This document shows, piece by piece, positions 12,801-60,866 of a DNA stretch of 64,000 nucleotides. The stretch spans positions 1,798,001 to 1,862,000 of the forward strand of contig CM119376.1 in assembly GCA_051294905.1 (NCBI GenBank). The letters are read 5' to 3'. The translations under genes were made by a program, and so were the position numbers. How positions within the stretch are numbered: position 1 is the stretch's first letter; the number at the start of each line of letters is the position of its first letter. Source of the DNA: Botryllus schlosseri (Eukaryota). A model generated the notes under the pieces. It did not search any database, was not told the origin of the DNA, and saw only the letters and a program-made list of their open reading frames with translations.

Positions 12801-15800
12801 TGACCGCAGACTCTACATACCTCGATCCGCTAAATTGAAAATCGACATTCAACCATATTTTTGTAAAAGAATTTATTGCATGGCGCAATATATCATGAAA
12901 TAATGCACCACGTGTGTAATGCAATAGCAAATCGAAATAATAACAAACCAGCACATCTAGCACCAACACATGGAAAAACGTAAGAAACCATTATAGCATT
13001 GGCAACTGAAGTTATTGCAATTATATTCGTTGCCCACACTGCAATGATAATAGGTCAACTGCTTTGACAGAGTTACGCCGGATTTTCTTGCCTCTCTCGT
13101 GAATCATGGACGAATAAAATACTTTGAATCAAGAAAGTGCTTTGATTAGATGGAACCGGGATTTGATGCCTGGCTTTGCTGGTCGTCAAATTTTCATAAA
13201 TGACCTGCGCGTTGTGGACGGAAATCTCGAGCAGACACGAACACACCTTTCAATACCAGAATCGCGACCGGAGCATTGATGTGCCGGTGCATTTCTTTTT
13301 ATTCGCTACTACGGGAAATACGTGAAACATTTCCACCAGAAGTGAAGCCATTTACGGACATAAATTTGCTGTCATATCAATAGCGGAGATCTTGTAGCTC
13401 GCTGAAGAACATCATGGCAGTATTGGTGTATTAGTATGAATAGCAAAAATATTCAATATGCGTAATCTTCAACAGCAACAGAAAATACATTGCTAAAACC
13501 CGCGCATGTTATTTCGTAACATAATTTTACTTCCAGTTCGAAGAATCTTCTGTGCGACTAATTTTTGATTATAAGTATTCCAATAGATGGGCAATGGGCA
13601 TAACCAGCACATGTTAGGAGAAAAGATCTGCAAATGAATTTGATGTCTCGGAGATGCGCTGATTTAGGTCACGGGCGCTGGTTTATCTCACGCGCGCACA
13701 TTCACGCGAACGTCGTGGCGAATTGTATTTTGCGCAAAACGTTTTTATGTATTCAATCTGCATTTTGAACAGGCTATTCGATAGTATAAGATGTTATTTA
13801 TGGCTCGACGTATGCGTATTGATAATAGCTATCCATCTGTTATAGTTGTAATTGTCTACGACCAGAACAACCCAGGAAATTTTGGATTAAGTAAAGCGTG
13901 TTCGTGAAAATACGCTCAGTAATCATTAATGAGTGTGCCGTTTCGATCGGGTTAATACGCCTACTAATACTACCCCTTGTTTGACAACTGTGGTTGCATA
14001 GTTTGACCTATGACCCCCTGATTTTTTTTCACGCCTTCAAAAATCCCTCGTGCGTAATGTCATTTTCAATTACAGATATCTCCTGCTGACCAGGTGGTAT
14101 CTTTGGAAAGCTCTTGTAAAGGACTATTGAAGTCAAGCATAATATTAGTGGGGATTGGTCGTAACATTTGAAAAATTTCTAAAAAATTCCTTGAAAAATT
14201 GTTCAGTTTTTTAAAAAAATTTCCTTTCATGACAGGTTGCATTGGATTAAGTATTATATCTGTAGTATAGGTTCTGTTTTGTAAAGTGGTTGTGGCAAAA
14301 AGTTGTTACATTCCCAAAGCCAAAAATTAACTTCACTGGATGACCTAAATGATGACGAACGGGAGCTTCTGAGAATGAGGGTTTGAGCAGAATGCAACAT
14401 CAATACTAGTACTGATCTTTTAACTACTGGTACAATTTGCTGGCTTCACAAGTATAAATTTCTTGGCCAATATTCTGTATCATATAAGACCTGCTGTGAT
14501 GTATTTAAGTCCACAAAAAACCTATCAAAAGCCTTTCATCATTTTAGGCCATCGTCTTCAACAAAGCTAGGAGAAAAACGTGTCAGCCAAGACGATCAGT
14601 ATATGTTGGAAGTTGAGTTGAATGAACACTCTGAAAACCAAGATCACATATGTCAAAGTGAAATTATTCAAAACCAATTTTTATGCTCGGTTTATGACAA
14701 AAACTGGTACATTGGCATGGACATAGAGTTGGATGAGCCAAACAACGATGCCTTGGTTGACTTCATGCACCCTAAAGGTCCATCTCCGTTTTTTCACTGG
14801 CCCCAAAATGAGGACTGTTGTTGCACGCCATTCCAGCACTTTTTGTGCACAGTAGACGTTCCTTTTTTGGTCAATAATCATGGACAGTATGATCTGACAA
14901 ATAAAAGTCGATCAAGGTTGGGAAAAATATCATAAAAGATAAATGTATCTGACATTCTGATGTGTGAAAAGTAATCATCGCAGCACAATATAAAAACTAC
15001 AAAACCCACAGAACATTGATTTTTATTGTCATGTTTAGTGCTGATTGTCACCCGAATCCATTGTGTAGACACAAAAAATATTGTATCTTATCCCTGAGGT
15101 AGTCAAAGTAGTCAAGAAAGCTACTCAAGTAAAAGTAGAAGTAGCGACGAAAAGTCTACTCAAGTATGAGTATAAGTACTTCTTTCATAAGCAACCCAAA
15201 ACTACTTGAAGTAGAATTGGCTGGCTTTTAATCTACTCAAGTAAGTAGTTGTGAAAACGATCGTAATTCGTTCGCATGGACTGTCAAAAGCTGCAAATAT
15301 CGCTATGCTGAAGGTGTAGAGAGCTTGATTCATATTCATGCATCCCAGGGGGTGTCAATTTTTGACAGAATAAGCAGTCGTCCACATCATGGGATGTAAA
15401 TGATAGTATTGATATGGAAATGCGATACTAATCCTTTGTTTCCTCGAACACCCGGTTTTAGAGAAACATGGCATGGCGCCCTACCCCATCATAAGGCCTC
15501 TAGTTCAGTCAAAGAGCAATACGGAGAAGTTGTGTCGGATACGGCTTAACACATTGCGTGATTAGTATACGTTGATTAAAATTATGGCAGATCGTGTAGA
15601 GCTTTATTTTCGGAAAATAGAAGGCATTACTACACTTGCTTTTATACTTGAACATGTATGTTCTCCAGACAAAGGAACTGAAACTCCAAATAAAACTCAA
15701 CGTATAATACTCGTAATTGAAAGAAAAATACTAATACTAATTCGAAAAAGCAGAAAATATATTTCATTAAACTACTTCTACTTGACAAACTGAAAATAGC

Positions 15801-49657: not shown

Positions 49658-52649
49658 CTTTGTAAGCAGAAATGGTGATATTATTATATTGTTAGGTTGC
49701 CTAAAAACGCTACAGGCCGAATTTGACTTGATTCCAACTGGTACATGTGAACGCAGAGGAGTTTCAAAACTTTGTATGTATTACTGCTGACGATTACCCC
49801 TGGCGAGTGTCAGCCGAAAATATTCGGGTTCATTTCAATATGATTATACTCCTCAACTGTATATTAAAGTTCAGCACCTCCGAGAAGCTATTAAAGTTAT
49901 TTTGCTGTAATGTTAGAATTATTAATGAAAAACTCAAATGACTTTGCTTCTACGTGTTGGAATTACGTCAAATTTGTTTGCATTGTTTTTGTAGACAACT
50001 TAACTATTTCATGGGGTTGATTGTAAAATCTGAAGAAATTTCCATAATCTTTTATAATATATATTCAAAATATTCAAACTCCTGTGCGTTCACATCTACC
50101 AGTTGGAGTCGAGCCGAAGTTTGTGTGCAGCGTGTTTTGGGCAACCTAACAATTTAATCAGTGAATCCACGGAATCCAGGAAAAAAAAGCTATTTTTGAA
50201 CAACCCTAGCGTGCAGTCACTTTCGCGCGTCTGCCCGTAGGTCAGTAATCTATACTTCGGCGCTTGTTGAAGATCTGTTTTTTCTATTTTGTTACGAATG
50301 CTATGATGCGAGGGACTTATCTGTTAAACGCGAATATATTATATAATGACACTGTTTCTTTCGTTTTAAAGCTTTCTCTTTACAACTCTATATCGTAATT
50401 GATCGGGTGATTCTAACTACCCAGGTTCAACCGCTTTACAAATGTTAACAACAGGATGTATGGCTTGATTTCTGCGATCCACTTTCTTAGATGCGTATTC
50501 AACAGTTACCATGCCATTTCCTACGACTGCTGCATGGGATCGTTAGCCTTACCAGTATTTGAAACTAGAGACCTTCGCCGATAGCCCCGACATACTCAGA
50601 TTATATTCAAAAGATATGGCATCTAGATCTTAGGCGTACTTCCAAAACTTAAGGCATTTAATTGAGCAGCTTTACAGCCTTTGTTATACTTGGGCATGAA
50701 ATAAACTAGAAAGGCTACGTTTGGACACCTGTAATGTTAAGATATGTAGAATTAGATCACTATTCCCAGTGTAGGAGTCGCAGATTGTAGTTCGGCCTCT
50801 CTACTACCGTACTGTGAAGTCACGAAATTAGCCGAGATTTTTTACCTCTAACGTCTGATGTCGATTATTTCCTGTGAAGTGTGATAATCGGTCTGGCTCT
50901 AGTTGAAACGCACATTGGTAAATTACGATTGACATTGAATGGACAAACAATACGTTACTCTTCAAAGAGTTCAAAAATCAGTATCACGCCATCCATATTA
51001 GCGCAAGCCAGTTAATGATCGTTAATAATATCTGCTCAAATGCTCTGACTGGTTGAGCAAAACTCCCCCCTTATTATAACGGACTACATCCCTCTTCAAG
51101 TGTGAACCATTTCTATATGTACATGTCAGCGTTTGCGACAGTCCTGGTAATGTGTCAGTGAATACAGCCAAGGATATTTAAAGTGTATTCTCGCCGGAAC
51201 TAAATTTTAGATGGTCTGTTAGTTCTGATGTGGATTTGTCTGTGATTACATAATGTAACAGGATCGAAGATTATTATATCACTGAACAATATCTCCTGCC
51301 CATGACATACGTGGTCATTGTCACAAACATTTCTACATTGCATGTCACGCTCTTGCGTGGCCGTACATTTCGTGGTCACTGCGCCAGGGATTTTGATTTT
51401 CCACTCTTTTTTAATTCAACAAGTGGGACCATACTTTCGTCATCTTAACTCTGTTTCACCATGCACTTTACGTTGAAAGTTCATACCTCATAGGTCTGAC
51501 GAACGGCTTGCACTAACTGTGCTAGCATGCGATGTGCTATTTGACTTGTGGGTTATGTTTGTATTGCATAGCGACTGCGGCCACATTATTGAACTTGAAT
51601 TGGCATTTGTAGGATCATCCTAGAACAACAGCCTGGTGCGCTTTCTAATATCATGTTAGGCTGCATGGCTGAGAACGAATGAAATGCGAATGACATAGCG
51701 TGATCTTTTTTTGTGTTACGAAATTCTTGTTGAGAAAATATATTATATCTGTGGAGTCAAGCATCCGTGCGGGAATATCTGAGCGGCTGGGGTGAGATGA
51801 GATTTAAACAATTTGAAAAAGATTTGCTTTTCCGAGCTAGATTAGAATTGGAATTATAGCTATTTTTTCAAATTAAGTTACGGTTAGAAAGAACTATACG
51901 AAAGTCAAGTTCAGGTCATATAAAATAGTTCATTCTCATCAGCACGAGGATGGCTAATGTCTGCACGCCAAGTTCTTTTTTCTAGGAAAATTAACGTAGA
52001 TTTCAAATTACAGCATGGAGATACCCTTCACGAATTAGATTAGAATTAGATTACCGGTGTTTTGCTTTAATTCGACAATTAGAACTAGACTAGATTAGAA
52101 TTATCTATAGTTACCCCAGACTGGGTGAGCTAGGCAGCCCCTTGGTATATGGAGTCTGGACCACGACCGAAAATTATTAAGACGACTAGCGTGGAATTTT
52201 GGCGCTGGATCAGATTTCATAGACAGAGTCGCGTGTGGCAGAACAGCAACACGGCGGTTTGAGAGTTGGCCCGGGCAGTTTCACGGATTTAATCATTCTT
52301 GTGTTTGCTGCCTTTATGCTGTTGCATGTGGATGATGTGAAGTAGTCGAAATCTATACGCAAGACGGATCATATTCCACAAGGCTATGGCTCGGTGTAAG
52401 GTAAGTCATTGGAATCCCTATATTCTGGATGACCGAGCCGCGCAAAAACGTCGTATCTCTGACTGCCGGGCTGCCGAGAGAAACGGAAAGGAGGTGTGTC
52501 AATGATCAGTTCAAAAACCAGAATGTATATTTAGAGTTCTTAGGGCTTGTTAGATGCTGGACTGACTGACAACTCAATTGAACGACAGTCGAGTGCGTGT
52601 CAGTGACAAATACCTATAACAGTTAGAGTTCAGGGTTGAGCTCGATTAA

Positions 52650-53180: not shown

Positions 53181-56100
53181 TAGGGTTGCCATACGTCCGG
53201 AATTTCCCGGGCATGTCCGGAATTTCACTTCACTTCGTCCGGGAGGAATTTCCAAAATATGCCTAAATGTCCGGAATTTTGAAGGCTTGAAGTAAAATCA
53301 TAATTTTCTCGTAAATCAACATAAACAACATTATTTTGGCTAGATTTATGCTACGTGAATTTTTTCTTCGTGCTGCGCGCGATTTCGCATCACATGTATT
53401 GGTTTTAATATGGGGCAAACCACCCTCGCAAAAATTGCGATCAAAAATTTATAAAAATAGCGTTCATTTACAGAAATGAGTCTAATTATAATCGCCGTTT
53501 ATTTGATGCTTTGTTCAATGATAGTGGTTCTAAACCTGGGTTAGTTTGCCTTTATTCTGGGCTTCGCGAAGATGTTGAACGTAATCAGCTTTCAAAATCG
53601 ACTGTGAGTAAGTCTGGGTAAATTTGCCGACATTTAATTAAATCAGCTTATCAAATTTGGAGCTGGGCCACGGCAAATTGAAAATGGAGTCGCGCCCATA
53701 AAAGGTGGGAAGCTACCGGATTTGGGGTGTTTATATAGCTCAGTGGCGCAGTGCGCACCGGCTTTAGGCTGATAAATAATCTTGTCGGTGTGACACGAAC
53801 ATGACTTAACAATGTACAATTACGCTCCTTGCATTTTCGAAGTCATCCTCCTCCACCAGCTAGCTCTGTACCGCTAACTCTGATCATGTGGGCGGAGAGA
53901 GGATCAAAATTGTAGAGTAATATGTGAAGGAACCAGCGAGTTGGATCAATTGTAATTTGTAATTGTAATTGAATGTAATTAATTACATTTTTCAATGTAA
54001 TTGTAATGTAATTGTAATTGAAGCATTTTTATTTTGTGTAATTGTAATTGTAATTTGACAAAAAATTTGCTCAATTACAATTTCAATTACATTAAATTGC
54101 TATTGAGACCGGACAAGCACAACATAAAATAATTGACTTATAATGCATTCTCTTTAAATGTCGACAAGGAATTTGGTGGATCCATTCGCGGAAGCCCTTG
54201 ACTGCGCCCTTGCGGGCGAAGTTTTTTTTATTTTTACCGCTATGCTGGCCTCGGCTGCCATTGTATACAATTCTTAGATTACTAACCAACGGATGGATTC
54301 GCAACACGTGACTCACGATTGAATACGCCGAGAAGCCAACTGCTGAGCCGGCTAAAAGCAGCAGAATTGATAGTCCCATAGCTGGCGATCCAAGCGTCGA
54401 AATTTGATATGTATGGTCCTAATCGAAAGCTAGGGTCGCACTGATTCCGCAATAAAAGTATATTTCCAGGCAATGGTACCATCCCAAAATAGTCGTGAAA
54501 GTCTGGGAATCGGCATTGTTCTGAACAATCGCTGGGCGTAATTGGTAATTGTTGTGGTCATGCTGCTGCAGCGCTCTCACTTTTCAGAACAGTCGGCCTT
54601 GAACGGCGATTTTGGAGCAGTTACATTGCCCTGACGAGATTTTATTTTGTATTTTCGGAATTAGTACATCAATAGATTACGATAAAGACCAGATGCATCA
54701 AATTTGGACGCATGGATCGCCAGCTCTAGGACTACAAAGTTTGCTGCTTTTAGCCGGCTCTGCAGTACGTTTGTCGCTGCATTCATCCGTGACTCACATT
54801 TTGCGCATCTATCTATAGATAACTAACCTACGGATAGATGGGCAACACGTGATTCACGGTCGAGAGCCCAGATGCCGTCAGATTTGTTGTCGCTTCATAG
54901 CATGAAGCGGCAGGTTGTTGGCCAGATTGATGTTTGGTGCAGGGCAATCACGATGTTCAGGTTATTTAGTGACACAGTACACAGCCACTGGCCCGGCTAT
55001 CATTGCATTAATATCAGGAGGATATTTCATGAGCATAATAAGTCATGATATTCACTCTACTATTAATTGGATTCAATATTGACTTCGGCTGTGATTTCCT
55101 TGAACTATTTTGGTTTGTCTAATCATTAGAGCGGCCATGTTTTGACATGTCAAAATTTGTCAAAATCGTAATAGTACAAAAGTTGCCTATTTCTGAGCCA
55201 AAAACGTTTTTTGATGCTAAACTACTTCGTTAGGACAGCTATAGTTCCTACCAGAAATGAAGATCTAAGAAGTTGGCTACAATTTTAACATTATGTGGTC
55301 AAAAAACGCCCTAATAATCAGAGATAGGTTTTAGTATGTAGTGCTAAATAAAGAGAATATGTTTTCATAATCCAGTCATAATTGATATGGAATAATTATA
55401 TTTCGAATTACTGACTGAGGATATCATGTGTGCGTAGGGCTTGGCACAATGATTCTCGAATCTGAACATAATATGATTGCGGTGGAGGATGCATCAACGA
55501 GTCACAACTGGAGCTATTTCAATTCAAAGTCAGCTGTCATAAAATAATCCAGTTTTTGGGCAACACAGTCTTCTTGCTTTGCATGTTGATACTGCCTAGC
55601 CATGCAAAGATTCCTCCTATGTAAAAAAAGAGGTAAACCAACACTATGGCTGAAACCTTGACGTTGGTGTGTTGGCTTTTGTCCAATATCAGCTGGCAGT
55701 CCACTTCGCAATGGTGACATATCAAACTGACACATATTTCCTCAGTATTTATTATTTTCAATATTTAATATTATATTATATATATTATTCAATCGACTTT
55801 CGCTTGGGTATTGGGGATGCATCGTAGGGCTTTGCCGATCTTTTCATTGCCTTTGATTGGGTGACATGATGGATGTCGTACGCTAGCTGTGAAATATCCG
55901 GATTTGTCCGTCTTCTCCCCATTTGTCTCTGTAATCACAATCCCAGTCAATAATCTAACGCAGGGGTGAGCAAACTACGGGCAAATTCACGCAGCCATGC
56001 AATTCTTTCATCGTCCAGGCTGCATATCGGATAACTAATGCGGCATGTGACGATATTGAACCATCTGTTTTAGGTCATAAAATCAAGCCCCTTGTTATAT

Positions 56101-56287
56101 GAGTGAAAATTCGTTACTCGTACCTTTCCATCATCAGAACAAAATCAGATGTACCGGTTGCTCCCATCCCTTTCAAACAATTTCCAACTTTGTGACTCAA
56201 TACAGCCGTAGCCAAACTGACATTCATCTGGCATGAAAAACAGTCACATTTCAGCCCAGTGAATGATTGCAAGCGCATCATCTATAC

Positions 56288-56672
56288 CAGTGCTTCTCAA
56301 CCTATTTCAGTTCGCGTCCCACTTTCCATCCAGATTTCATTGCGTGGCCCACCACACATCCTTTTGCGACAAACGTTCAAACCACTACAGACAATAGAGC
56401 GAATAGCTGCGGGACTCGTGCACTTTGGGACCAAAAACTCATTTTCTCCGTAAGGCTGTAGTGAGTTTAGTCCGAAAGTGCACGAGCCCCGCAGGTCCGT
56501 CAATTACATGTTCCAGAATCATCATCCAAAGTGGAAGAAAGCGTTGAAAATTTTGACATTTTTCGACTTGGTCTTCGTGGTAGAGAACAGATCTACAAAT
56601 TGGGATATATCATCGTTTCTTAAAATGTCTTCGCGGCCCAAGTGGACGCAGCCAACCGGTTGAAAAGCACTG
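56288..56672. mobile_element. Charlie/Buster-like hAT MITE
   Basis: cagtgcttctcaacc...ggttgaaaagcactg; TSD atctatac/atctagac (NTCTAGAN-like target). Confidence 0.75.
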
Positions 56673-57539
56673 ATCTAGACCAGAGGTGTCAAACATATTT
56701 TTTGCCTACTTTAGATCGTGGATTTAAATTAACATGGGCCAATGGAAGTCCCGACTGGTAAAGTGCCAGGCTGCGCGACTCCACGTCAAACAGTTTTTGG
56801 ATATCCGTCCATAATATATCTTGCCCTCTCCCATTCATGTTCATGTATCGAGATCCCTCTGCTTTCGATGAATAGAGAGTTCCGGAGAGTTCCGTCTGTT
56901 AGGATATAAGAATATATCGGGTATGGAATTTTGGGACTGTTTTCACATGGTAGGCCTACTAACATTTAATTTTCATAAGTCAAGTAATACCCAGAATTTT
57001 CGTTGCGCTTCGCGCGCGGTAGATACGGTGTGACAAATATGTGTAAACGAAAGTATCACTGAATATAATCTAAGATATCGGGTTACGTTCACACAGCATC
57101 ACAGTAACTATGACCCCCCCCCCCCCCCACCATAACATTTGATACTATCGTTTCGCAATCTAGCAGTAACATGACGTGTCCAAATCCGGAAAAGTGAATA
57201 TTGACTTTTTTTAACGTTAGACTTAGACCTGTTCTAGCAGACCACCGTTGAAACTTTCTGGACAAACGACACATTATATATTACCGCTTTTTTGTATTTC
57301 TCTTCAAATTACGGGCATTATTGTCATTGTTTCAGTTATTTTGTAAACATTTTGAAAACATACGAACTGCCATATTTTTAATTAACGTTTACTAATCGCG
57401 CAAAGTGTTGAAGCCGTATCCGACACAACTTGTCACCAATGCTCATCGACTAAACTAGGCGCCTTATAATATGGGGGAGGGCGCCATGCCATGATATTCT
57501 CTAAAACGGGGTGTTCAAGTAAACAAAGAATTAGTAGCA

Positions 57540-57862
57540 CATTCCATATCAATACTATCATTTACATCCCATGATATGGACGACTGCCTATTCTGTCAAA
57601 AATTGACCCCGCCTGGGATGGATCAATATGAATCAAGCTCTTTACTCCTTCCTCATAGCTTTTGGCAGTCCATGCGAACGAATTACAATAGTTTTCAAAA
57701 CTACTTACTTGAGTAGCTTCAAAGTCAGTCAATTCTACTTCTACTCCATGTAGTTTTAGGTTGCTTATGGAAGAAGTACTTTTACTCATACTTGAGTAGA
57801 TTTTTTCATCGCTACTTCTATTTCTACTTGAGTAGCTTTCTTGACTACTTTGACCACCTCTG
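57540..57862 (-). mobile_element. AGTAG-repeat hAT MITE fragment
   Basis: Reverse-complement homolog of about 15095-15430; ends ...ctttgaccacctctg. Confidence 0.65.
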
Positions 57863-57999
57863 GTAGTGCTCACCGTATTACAATTATATGATCTAAAATT
57901 ATCAGGTAAAGCTACCTTGAGGAGATACTGAGGATCGGAGCATAGAAAAATTGGACTTACAGGAGCGTACGGATTTGGATCAGTAAAGAGTCCATCTAA

Positions 58000-58179
58000 T
58001 GGTATCTTCTTTGTTCCAGCAATAACCTAGGCCTAATTTTCACGTCACGGAATATGGTGGGTCTATGCGATCGTCTCATCGAAGAAATGCCCAAGTTGGC
58101 CCTTGGAACGTTCACGCAAGATGTGCTAGAGGCATTTTTTGGAAATTTAGTAAGATACTTAAACGTAATAAGGCGTTAG
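58000..58179 (+). pseudogene. P-element/THAP9-type transposase remnant (catalytic Glu region)
   Basis: WYLLCSSNNLGLIFTSRNMVGLCDRLIEEMPKLALGTFTQDVLEAFFGNL; matches the GLIxT...LCxxL...QDxLExFFG signature; below the ORF-track cutoff. Confidence 0.7.
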
Positions 58180-60866
58180 ATTATTGACTGGGATTGTGAT
58201 TGCAGAGACAAATGGGGAGAAGACGGACAAATCCGGATATTCCACATCTAGCGTACGACATCCATCATGTCACCCAATCAAAGGCAATGAAAAGATCGGC
58301 AAAGCCCTACGGCTACGATGCATCCCCAATACCCAAGCGAAAGTCGATTGAATAATATATATAAGATAATATTAAATATTGAAAATAATAAATACTGAGG
58401 ATATATGTGTCAGTTTGATATGTCACCATTGCGAAGTGGACTGCCAGCTGATATTGGACAAAAGCCAACACACCAACGTCAAGGTTTCAGCCATAGTGTT
58501 GGTTTACCTCTTTTTTACATAGGAGGAATCTTTGCATGGCTAGGCAGTATCAACATGCAAAGCAAGAAGACTATGTTGCCCAAAAACTGGATTATTTTAT
58601 GACAGCTGACTTCGAAGTGAAATAGCTCCAGTTGTGACTCGTTGATGCATCCTCCACCGCAATCATATTATGTTTAGATTCGAGAATCATTGTGCCCAGC
58701 CCTACGCACACATGATATCCTCAGTCAGTAATTCGAAATATAATTATTCCATATCAATTATGCCTGGATTATGAAAACATATTCTCTTTATTTAGCACTA
58801 CATACTAAAACCTATCTCTGATTATTAGGGCGTTTTTTGACCACATAATGTTAAAATTGTAGCCAACTTCTTAGATCTTCATTTCTGGTAGGAACTATAG
58901 CTGTCCTAACGAAGTAGTTTAGCATCAAAAAACGTTTTTGGCTCAGAAATAGGCAACTTTTTACCACTACGATTTTGACAAATTTTGACATGTCAAAAAA
59001 TGGCCGCTCTAATGATTATACAAACCAAAATAGTTCAAGGAAATCTCAGCCGAAGTCAATATTGAAACCAATTAATAATGGAGTGAATATCATGACTTAT
59101 TTTGCTCATGAAATATCCTCCTGATATTGATGCAATGATAGCCGCGCCAGTGCCTGTGTACTGTATCACTAAATAACCTGTTGTGATTGCCCTATATCCT
59201 ATCTGCACCAAACATCAATCTGGCCAACAACCTGCCGCTTCACGCTATGAAGCGACAACAAATCTGACGGCATCTGGGCTCTCGACCGTGAATCACGTGT
59301 TGCCCATCTATCCGTAGGTTAGTTATCTATAATCTATCCGTGGGTTGGCAATCCACAATACGATTTCAGATCACGATGCTGCATCGTTATTTCGTCTGGC
59401 TAACTAACCAGACCACTGGATATTATATAACGTCTTATCTGACAAAGCACGGTTTTGTTTTTACTCCTCATCCTAATTCCTACGTCCCTCGATAAAGATA
59501 ATATTATTTCTTTAATTATATGCTATATACGCGAATCCAACACGTGCATATATTATAATACTTTTTCAACGACATACTGCACCCTATCCTTAATCCTAAC
59601 CCATAGGAAATTAGGTAAAAAACATTTTACATTTCCAATTACGTGAGCCATAATTACCGAGCATACAAAACACGTCACAATGACATCTTACATAGCATAA
59701 TATGTACGGCATAAACGCATTTATTACTACACAATCTGAACTAGACTTGAATTGTTGTTAAATACGACGCTACGGTTGTCAAGGAGCACGGTTGAATTTA
59801 TGATTATTCAATTACATGTTCAACAGCAGTAATTGTAATTGTAATTGTAATGTAATTGAAGCATGCAAGGAGTAATTGTAATTGTAATTTGATATTTTTA
59901 GCATGGAGTAATTGTAATTGTAATGTAATTGAAACATTCATGAAAGTAATTGTAATTGTAATTGTAATTGAACTGAAATAATGTAATTGATCCAACTCTG
60001 GAAGGAACCAGTAGTATTGACATAATTCATTCAAATCATTTACCGACCATTATGCATATACTAAGCCCCCAGAAGTTGCATCCATTATATACTACGGAGG
60101 GCCCAAAATTAATGTTTATTTGTGGATGATGGGCTGACAAAATGGGGCTTCGAACCTGGTTACAACTTACAACACACAACCATATACTCCTTAACCGGAT
60201 TGTGACCACTTCTAGTCGATAGACAAAGCTTTGCAGGTGTGACGTCATATTACTGGACAATGTGCTCATACCTCATTTTAAAATCCACTAGTGGGCGCTG
60301 ACGAGCGTCCGGAATTTGTGTCACAAAAATATGGTAACCCTACCCTAGCTCAATGGATCGTCCACATACAATGTGTCGTTCAAAGTAACCGTTTATAGGG
60401 GCACTTATCAATGTTCAAACTGTATTTATGTCACTCAAACGAATAAAACAGCACTATTCAATGTGTCACGAAAATGAACTGTATAGTGTTAATGTGACTC
60501 AGTCGATGCAAGTACATTACACGCCCTTTGTCAATGAGTCTATTTAAAATACTTTTACGATCAAAATTACACAACTTGTATGTGCCCAGCTGTTTAAAAC
60601 AGCGAAAGACTTGCAACGAGATTAGACCACTTATCTATATAGTAGTATCAAATGCCATTTTTACTGTACCAAGTTCAAGTATATTCATAAAATTTCATCA
60701 CAAGACTGCAATACAATGAATGATAGGAAGATGCCGAAACGGCTAGGAGTAGTGTTTGAGATCAGACATCCCACCTCGGCCTAGACGATGTAAAGAGGAG
60801 GCATGCACACTGAATGAAAGTACAAGAAGATAAAAGCAGGTGACGGAAGGCGAGATCGATATGTCA

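What the first reader, a model, noticed from the sequence alone, without database searches (positions are those of the whole stretch)
54807..59338. Galileo-like foldback P element: ~1.15-kb TIRs, 7-bp TSD, P-transposase remnant
Seen: arms 54814-55961 and 58173-59331 are reverse complements with scattered substitutions and indels (so not a simple assembly mirror); flanks carry a 7-bp duplication atctatc; just inside the right arm a frame missed by the ORF track reads LGLIFTSRNMVGLCDRLIEEMPKLALGTFTQDVLEAFFG. Established: QDxLExFFG surrounds the catalytic Glu of P-element/THAP9 transposases, and very long TIRs with 7-bp TSDs define Drosophila Galileo; canonical P elements have short TIRs and 8-bp TSDs. 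P-superfamily elements are known from ascidians, so the novelty is the architecture. The termini are TATAG...CTATA rather than CA...TG, so this may be an independent long-TIR P lineage. Such foldbacks can drive inversions and produce dsRNA.
Basis: partly seen in the sequence, partly recalled or inferred. Interest (0 to 1): 0.8.

Follow-up and report, generated by a model that had tools for sequence, protein, structure and literature searches.

The report
Rearranged P-type transposon with long arms
This is a real but broken copy of a P-element-type jumping gene, probably in a sea squirt genome; its 1.15-kb inverted arms arose at least partly because the gene's tail end was duplicated in reverse, so it is a modest addition to a known transposon superfamily.

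Summary
Arms 54814-55961 and 58173-59331 are inverted copies with 26 substitutions and 5 indels. The 7-bp duplication ATCTATC is real: uninterrupted copies of the host repeat in public reads carry it once. The peptide is a genuine exon holding the catalytic Glu motif of P/THAP9 transposases.

That exon (E) splices into a last exon (F) lying inside the right arm, and F is also in the left arm. The spacer carries four more exons of the same transposase on the opposite strand. Exon E abuts a truncated exon A head-on at 58026/58027. The copy therefore has two 3' ends and no 5' half (no THAP, HTH or RNase H-N). The right arm plus E is an inverted duplicate of the gene's tail. A later deletion removed E on the left, and two unrelated repeats were inserted.

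Relatives in Styela clava and Ciona intestinalis have the full P-type domain order between 0.3-0.77-kb inverted arms. Long arms thus look typical of this ascidian lineage. Galileo membership is not supported: the gene has many introns and the arms have no tandem repeats.

The scan's first readers noted similar 7-bp-TSD foldbacks elsewhere in this genome; those notes are unchecked.

The parts
54275..54806 (.). Left part of the host element: an older palindromic MITE of about 560 bp, continued at 59339-59357. Its terminal 43 bp are 86% like the termini of the large element.
   Evidence: Very high summed depth in reads.
54807..54813 (.). Left copy of the 7-bp target site duplication ATCTATC.
54814..55961 (.). 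Left inverted arm. Terminus TATAGATAACTAACC..., with a CACGTGA motif 32 bp further in.
55785..55928 (-). Last coding exon F with its stop codon: the copy in the left arm.
   Evidence: tblastn to the Styela exon; ORF listing; translation
55965..56063 (-). Exon D (DDERIAWLREF...). Its 3' end is fused at 55961/55962 to the middle of the last intron. This deletion removed exon E from its natural place.
   Evidence: RNA joint 56064-56124
56125..56227 (-). Exon C, part of the GTP-binding insertion domain.
   Evidence: tblastn; Pfam TNP-like_GBD E 0.023; RNA joints with CT..AC ends
56289..56673 (.). Unrelated nested MITE (TIR CAGTGCTTCTCAACC) inside the B-C intron.
   Evidence: (I10); raised depth and a 482-nt RNA skip
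56710..56884 (-). Exon B.
   Evidence: tblastn 54% to the Styela exon; RNA joints
56924..57860 (.). Nested block of a very high-copy repeat (end CCAGAGGTGGTCAAAG...TACTCAAGTAG) in the A-B intron. It is absent from other copies.
   Evidence: DNA joint 56923-57861 in X1 and depth profile; second copy at 15093-15595
57916..58026 (-). 3' part of exon A (VIAGTKK...FLCSDPQYLLK), truncated at 58026 by the inversion junction.
   Evidence: tblastn 55%; translation; RNA joint at 57916
58027..58149 (+). It is inverted relative to exons A-D.
58150..58205 (+). Last intron (GTAAGA...TTGCAG). The arm begins inside it, at 58173.
   Evidence: sequence; spliced homolog P0005; RNA joint 58148 to 55929
58206..58355 (+). 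Last coding exon F with its stop codon: the copy in the right arm.
58173..59331 (.). Right inverted arm.
59332..59338 (.). Right copy of the 7-bp target site duplication ATCTATC.
59339..59357 (.). Remainder of the host MITE's right terminus.
   Evidence: (D7, I16)

Best explanation
This is a non-autonomous, internally rearranged copy of a multi-exon P-superfamily DNA transposon of an ascidian-type lineage. It integrated with a 7-bp staggered cut (ATCTATC) into the terminal region of an older, abundant MITE that carries related termini. Shown: the body of the transposase gene lies on the minus strand (3' part of exon A, then B, C, D, then F in the left arm). The right arm plus the exon E fragment is the gene's 3' end (E, last intron, F, 3' region, terminus) in the opposite orientation, fused head-on to a truncated exon A. 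The copy therefore has two 3' ends and lacks the 5' half (THAP, HTH, RNase H-N), so it cannot make transposase. Inferred: the family has native inverted arms of a few hundred bp, as its relatives do. Pairing of these arms, or mis-invasion during repair of an excision gap, allowed DNA synthesis to copy sequence next to the 3' arm onto the other end. This extended the inverted repeat to at least 1305 bp and deleted the 5' half. A later deletion on the left side (end of exon D to mid last intron) removed exon E and trimmed the repeat to 1148 bp. Two unrelated repeats then landed in introns. The copy could still be moved in trans by transposase from intact family members, which are transcribed and spliced in RNA runs of this organism.
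For: Arms and TSD. Exon map from tblastn with Styela clava exons: minus-strand hits at 58026-57874, 56877-56707, 56245-56147, 56105-55965 and 55934-55839, against plus-strand hits at 58030-58152 and 58200-58295. Splicing of E to F: a canonical GTAAGA..TTGCAG intron. The spliced E+F peptide is 61% identical over 71 aa to Styela P0005 (E 3e-31), and P0005 itself reads ...FFGNLRQLGRRR.... RNA contigs join E to F, and join A-B, B-C and C-D at GT..AG sites of the minus strand. P-superfamily membership: a relative, P0044, matches the solved Drosophila P transposase 6P5A at E 3.5e-14, and the family profile aligns QDVLEAFFGN with QDIVEHFFGS, where the Glu is residue 531 of 6P5A. Pfam gives TNP-like_GBD at 6.7e-8 for the exon upstream of E in L003. 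It gives GBD 3.8e-15 plus RNaseH_C 6.6e-9 in P0043 and RNaseH_N 7e-6 in Ciona L006. The order THAP, HTH, RNaseH_N, GBD, RNaseH_C is seen in both L001 and L006. Relatives have inverted arms of 715 nt (L001, 96%), about 675-770 nt (L006, 86-93%) and 303 nt (L004, 75%) around the gene, with exon F outside the arms. The junctions are real: X10 contigs bridge 58026/58027, and the arm contig ends at 58173. Arm divergence is uneven: 14 mismatches and most indels lie 101-400 nt from the tip, against 11 mismatches in the inner 748 nt (Fisher p 0.006, a post-hoc split). This fits an older outer TIR and a younger inner extension. The same kind of TIR extension, by inverted duplication of internal sequence in non-autonomous copies, is described for Galileo (PMC3573991).
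Against: No full-length copy from this same genome could be fetched, so the native arm length of this family in this species is unknown. The close hits P0001 and P0002 came without DNA. The TSD rests on a single insertion. The three relatives' loci show no clean TSD. Single exons of the window score weakly or not at all in Pfam; membership rests on transitive homology and on relatives. The divergence contrast along the arms is post hoc. It cannot be told whether the rearrangement happened at this site or before transposition.
Confidence: 0.8

Rival explanations
1. The element is a native long-TIR (Galileo-like) element. In this species the family's normal TIRs are about 1.15 kb and naturally include the last coding exon, and this copy is merely an internally deleted member.
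For: Relatives in two other ascidians have long arms. The scan's first readers noted several foldbacks in this genome with 7-bp TSDs and arms from 0.6 kb to over 1 kb (unchecked). Galileo shows that such architecture exists within the superfamily.
Against: Exon E lies inverted against a truncated exon A, with both cut mid-exon. A simple internal deletion cannot produce that. In the relatives, exon F lies 1.7 kb or more inside the arm boundary.
Confidence: 0.13
2. Two separate insertions: a 3' fragment of one copy landed, inverted, next to or inside another truncated copy, and the pair only looks like one element.
For: The head-on A/E junction is what a nested or adjacent inverted insertion could give.
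Against: The two outer termini are flanked by one matching 7-bp TSD within a host repeat whose uninterrupted copies have a single ATCTATC. The whole block therefore occupies one integration site. There is no second TSD at 58026/58027.
Confidence: 0.04
3. Assembly artefact: a mirrored or chimeric join.
For: Long inverted repeats are a known assembly hazard.
Against: The arms differ at 26 sites and 5 indels. An independent run with its own sequence differences bridges the inner junction, and its arm contig stops exactly at 58173 at about twice the spacer depth.
Confidence: 0.02

Closest known systems
Galileo (P superfamily, Drosophila; Marzo et al. 2008, 2013)
   Same: 7-bp TSD. Inverted arms in the range 0.3-1.2 kb. 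The longest arms are found in non-autonomous copies and arise by inverted duplication of internal sequence (PMC3573991; PMC3698922).
   Different: Galileo's transposase gene is intronless, whereas this one has six or more exons. No internal tandem repeats were found in these arms. The termini read TATAG...CTATA. The host is probably an ascidian, not a fly. Clade membership was not tested.
Ciona intestinalis P elements Pcin1-3 (Kimbacher et al. 2009)
   Same: A P-homologous, many-exon transposase in an ascidian, with TIRs and TSDs (from the abstract as I recall it; cited). The closest protein relatives found here are from Ciona intestinalis and Styela clava.
   Different: The window's peptide is only 48-56% identical to the Ciona proteins, so this is another species and subfamily. 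The published TIR and TSD lengths could not be read because the paper is not held.
Canonical Drosophila P element and zebrafish Pdre2/THAP9
   Same: Same transposase architecture: RNase H fold split by a GTP-binding insertion domain, with the catalytic Glu in QD..E.FFG.
   Different: Those elements have 31-bp or 13-bp TIRs and 8-bp TSDs. This one has a 7-bp TSD and arms of hundreds of bp.
1360/Hoppel (P superfamily)
   Same: 7-bp TSD.
   Different: 1360 is intronless and has short TIRs. It was not compared by sequence.

Membership tests
P superfamily (P/THAP9-type transposons) | RNase H-like catalytic core interrupted by a GTP-binding insertion domain | tested here: met
   Window exon C hits TNP-like_GBD weakly (E 0.023). 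The homologous exon next to E in L003 passes the Pfam cut-off (6.7e-8). P0043 has GBD 3.8e-15 plus RNaseH_C 6.6e-9. P0044 matches 6P5A at 3.5e-14.
P superfamily (P/THAP9-type transposons) | Catalytic Glu within the QD..E.FFG motif | tested here: met
   QDVLEAFFGN aligns with QDIVEHFFGS of 6P5A, Glu at residue 531. Q, D, L, E, F and G are invariant in 18 relatives.
P superfamily (P/THAP9-type transposons) | [quoted passage not shown] | tested here: inconclusive
   Absent from this copy, whose 5' half is deleted. Relatives L001 and L006 have an exon with a weak THAP hit (E about 0.03, C-terminal half of the profile) at the expected place.
P superfamily (P/THAP9-type transposons) | TSD of 7-8 bp | tested here: met
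   Exactly 7 bp, confirmed by empty-site reads. This is one insertion only.
Galileo family | 7-bp TSD and TIRs of hundreds of bp | tested here: met
   However, at least the inner part of the arms is a secondary duplication.
Galileo family | Intronless transposase gene | tested here: not met
   Six or more exons, with GT..AG introns confirmed by RNA joints. The relatives are equally split.
Galileo family | Internally repetitive TIRs (tandem repeats) | tested here: not met
   Tandem Repeats Finder reports only two weak AT-rich 16-nt arrays in the arms.
Galileo family | Transposase groups with the Galileo clade | not tested
   No Galileo or 1360 protein sequences could be fetched with these tools.
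Canonical P element / Pdre2 | 8-bp TSD and short (13-31 bp) TIRs | tested here: not met
   The TSD is 7 bp and the arms are 1148/1159 nt.
Ciona Pcin elements | TIR and TSD lengths as published | not testable with these tools
   The paper is not held.

The most novel reading that the evidence does not exclude
Ascidians carry a distinct, still transcribed P-superfamily lineage. It combines a many-exon P-type transposase with Galileo's hallmarks: a 7-bp TSD and long inverted arms that grow by inverted duplication. It also has a conserved terminal motif (TATAGAT...CACGTGAT) shared between Styela and this species, and a separate second ORF next to one arm. If so, long dynamic TIRs and 7-bp TSDs either arose twice or are ancestral in the superfamily.
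Probability: 0.35. Interest if true: 0.5.

Novelty: new variant of a known kind. Interest (0 to 1): 0.35.

Why it matters
It extends the long-arm, 7-bp-TSD form of the P superfamily, so far described for Drosophila Galileo, to a chordate relative. It also gives a dissected example of how such arms grow, by inverted duplication of the gene's 3' end. For annotation, the practical lesson is that a foldback's arms can contain coding exons, so arm length in a single copy is a poor guide to family architecture. Long inverted arms like these can promote ectopic recombination. Otherwise this is an ordinary decayed transposon copy.

Tried and rejected
- Pfam on exons E and F alone gave nothing.
- phmmer of exon E against PDB sequences gave only spurious repeat-protein (Pizza) hits.
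- The closest protein relatives, P0001 and P0002, came without DNA, so no second copy from the closest source could be read.
- The protein search found no annotated protein from the window's own genome.
- A TSD scan around the arms of L001, L004 and L006 found no matching 5-9-mers. In L001 the likely true left terminus lies 38 bp outside the detected arm and the right end seems truncated.
- The solo family terminus at 50240-50254 has no partner, so it gives no TSD.
- I first read an in-frame stop in exon D. The RNA joints showed that it lies in the intron, so I withdrew that reading.
- ORF-X could not be identified beyond a weak Tnp_P_element_C hit.
- The Kimbacher 2009 paper is not held.
- Copy number cannot be derived from the summed contig depths.
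- Rejected readings: assembly mirror, separate insert for the peptide, and two independent insertions.
Full report
**Observation**

The two arms, 54814-55961 and 58173-59331, align as reverse complements from end to end. Identity is 95.8% with gaps counted: 26 mismatches and 5 gaps covering 23 columns.

ATCTATC stands directly outside both termini (54807-54813 and 59332-59338). It cannot be extended on either side.

The element sits inside an older palindromic MITE of about 560 bp (54275-54813 plus 59339-59357). The MITE's own left arm reads the equivalent of GCGAATCCATCCG where the interrupted right arm reads GCGCATCTATC[insert]ATCTATCCG.

Contigs from four public runs reach 59332 from the left with the window's left-flank sequence. 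These are uninterrupted copies of that MITE with one ATCTATC. This is an empty-site proof of a 7-bp TSD.

**Is it a P-type transposase?**

The 51-aa stretch alone gave nothing in Pfam and only spurious hits in the PDB. A language-model search pointed to PF21789, the C-terminal RNase H part of P-like transposases.

An exhaustive phmmer search found 18 relatives, all short gene fragments. One of them, P0005 from Styela clava, continues ...FFGNLRQLGRRRSQNPDITQVAYG....

In the window the same continuation is obtained by splicing. Exon E ends at 58149. A GTAAGA donor follows, a TTGCAG acceptor ends at 58205, and exon F (58206-58355) reads RQMGRRRTNPDIPHLAYD... to a stop.

The spliced E+F peptide matches P0005 at 61% over 71 aa (E 3e-31). 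It also matches proteins that carry PF21788 plus PF21789 at E 1e-11 to 3e-14.

One of those, P0044, matches the solved Drosophila P transposase 6P5A at E 3.5e-14. The family profile aligns QDVLEAFFGN with QDIVEHFFGS, whose Glu is residue 531 of 6P5A. From my recollection of the 6P5A paper, not checked here, this is the third catalytic residue.

RNA contigs from two runs join E to F. The aligner laid the F part on the left arm copy, with a one-base shift explained by a synonymous TTG/TTA difference.

**What the spacer holds**

I ran tblastn with the exons of the Styela element (L001) against the window. It gave four further exons of the same gene on the minus strand:
- A at 58026-57916
- B at 56884-56710
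- C at 56227-56125
- D at 56063-55965

These are followed by exon F in the left arm, 55928-55785. The exon limits agree with RNA joints that have GT..AG ends on the minus strand. Exon C hits the GTP-binding insertion domain weakly.

Exon A starts abruptly at 58026 in mid-exon (VIAGTKK..., where relatives read ...RRFFKLIAGV...). Exon E starts at 58027 on the other strand, also in mid-exon, lacking the conserved ...KR..A.PTLE lead.

On the left, exon D is fused near its last codons to position 58173-equivalent of the last intron. So exon E is missing from its natural place.

The copy thus consists of the 3' two-thirds of the gene on the minus strand plus an inverted duplicate of the gene's tail. 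It has two 3' ends and no THAP, HTH or RNase H-N part.

Two foreign repeats lie in introns:
- a 385-bp MITE at 56289-56673
- a 937-bp block of a very abundant repeat at 56924-57860, which other copies lack

**Independent support that the structure is real**

In DNA run X10, a 368-nt contig spans 57835-58202 with 8 differences. A 423-nt contig spans the nested MITE's left junction. A 1148-nt contig equals the arm, stopping at 58173, at depth 8.27 against 4.17 and 5.77 for spacer contigs.

**Relatives**

The protein search shows the family in Styela clava and Ciona intestinalis. Four genomic loci were read.

- L001 (Styela): arms of 715 nt at 96% around a roughly 7-kb element. Its exons hit, in order, THAP, the P-element HTH, RNase H-N, then the exons matching the window's B-D, E and F.
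- L006 (Ciona): arms of about 675-770 nt at 86-93% and the same domain order, with RNase H-N above the Pfam cut-off.
- L004 (Styela): arms of 303 nt at 75%.
- L005 (Ciona): no arms around the gene.

In none of them does exon F lie in an arm, and none shows a clean TSD.

In L001 the motif TATAGAT...CACGTGAT, which forms the window element's terminus, stands 38 bp outside the detected left arm. The motif is expected 0.01 times per 64 kb. This suggests a conserved terminal motif and a truncated right end in that copy.

**Mechanism**

Shown:
- one integration site with a 7-bp TSD
- a head-on exon junction
- a deletion junction on the left
- nested inserts
- family transcripts that are spliced

Inferred:
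- The family has native arms of a few hundred bp.
- Strand pairing between them, or mis-invasion during gap repair after excision, let synthesis copy the sequence adjacent to the 3' arm onto the other end. This extended the repeat to at least 1305 bp (59331 back to 58027) and lost the 5' half.
- A later deletion removed E on the left.

The uneven divergence of the arms is a hint in this direction. There are 14 mismatches and most indels at 101-400 nt from the tip, against 11 in the inner 748 nt (p 0.006). This split is post hoc.

The same process is documented for Galileo. There the longest TIRs occur in non-autonomous copies that recruited internal sequence by inverted duplication (PMC3573991).

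**Comparison with known families**

The literature lists three families in the P superfamily (PMC3698922; PMC7776569):

| Family | TSD | TIRs | Gene |
|---|---|---|---|
| P | 8 bp | short | – |
| 1360 | 7 bp | – | intronless |
| Galileo | 7 bp | 0.3-1.2 kb | intronless |

P-like elements are known from Ciona.

This element meets the superfamily's catalytic and TSD criteria. It shares the 7-bp TSD and long arms with Galileo. It fails two Galileo traits: the gene is not intronless and the arms have no tandem repeats. Its clade could not be tested.

It is best filed as a rearranged member of an ascidian P lineage with long arms. That is a variant of a known kind, not a new kind.

**Limits**

- No second copy from the same genome could be read.
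- The TSD rests on one insertion.
- Copy number cannot be taken from the contig depths.
- Other first-reader notes in this genome describe further foldbacks with 7-bp TSDs. They are unchecked.

Noticed in passing
L003:2397-3191(-); L001:11210-12022(-); L006:5870-6484(+): The ascidian P-like elements carry a conserved second ORF of about 170-265 aa (tblastn E 1e-13 to 1e-16) with a weak Tnp_P_element_C hit (E 0.011). It always lies next to one inverted arm and reads inward. In Styela and a metagenome contig it is downstream on the opposite strand; in Ciona it is upstream on the same strand. It is absent from the window's copy.
   Followed up: partly
window 53927-54106 and 59835-60011: The host MITE itself lies inside an outer foldback element. 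Its arms are built of GTAATT-type tandem units, with termini C(A)GAGTTGGATCAATTG...CAATTGATCCAACTC. It is flanked by an exact 11-bp direct repeat GAAGGAACCAG (53927-53937 and 60001-60011). The locus is therefore a four-level nest of transposons.
   Followed up: partly
window 50159-50254: A solo right terminus of the same family (…CCGTAGGTCAGTAATCTATA, ending at 50254) stands next to a short foldback (arms 49682-49790 and 50050-50158). No left partner was found, so there is no TSD.
   Followed up: partly
window 56924-57860 and 15093-15595: A very high-copy repeat with a Tol2-like end (CCAGAGGTGGTCAAAG, repeated TACTCAAGTAG units). Its summed depth in DNA contigs is a hundred-fold or more above that of neighbouring sequence.
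   Followed up: no
L001:5885-5906: The terminal motif TATAGAT..CACGTGAT of the window's element recurs in Styela clava 38 bp outside the detected left arm of the P-like element. The right end there lacks it.
   Followed up: partly
window 58900-59023: A segment of about 100 bp inside the arm has roughly five-fold higher read depth than the rest of the arm, and contigs diverge at 58949 and 59001. It is probably shared with another repeat family.
   Followed up: no
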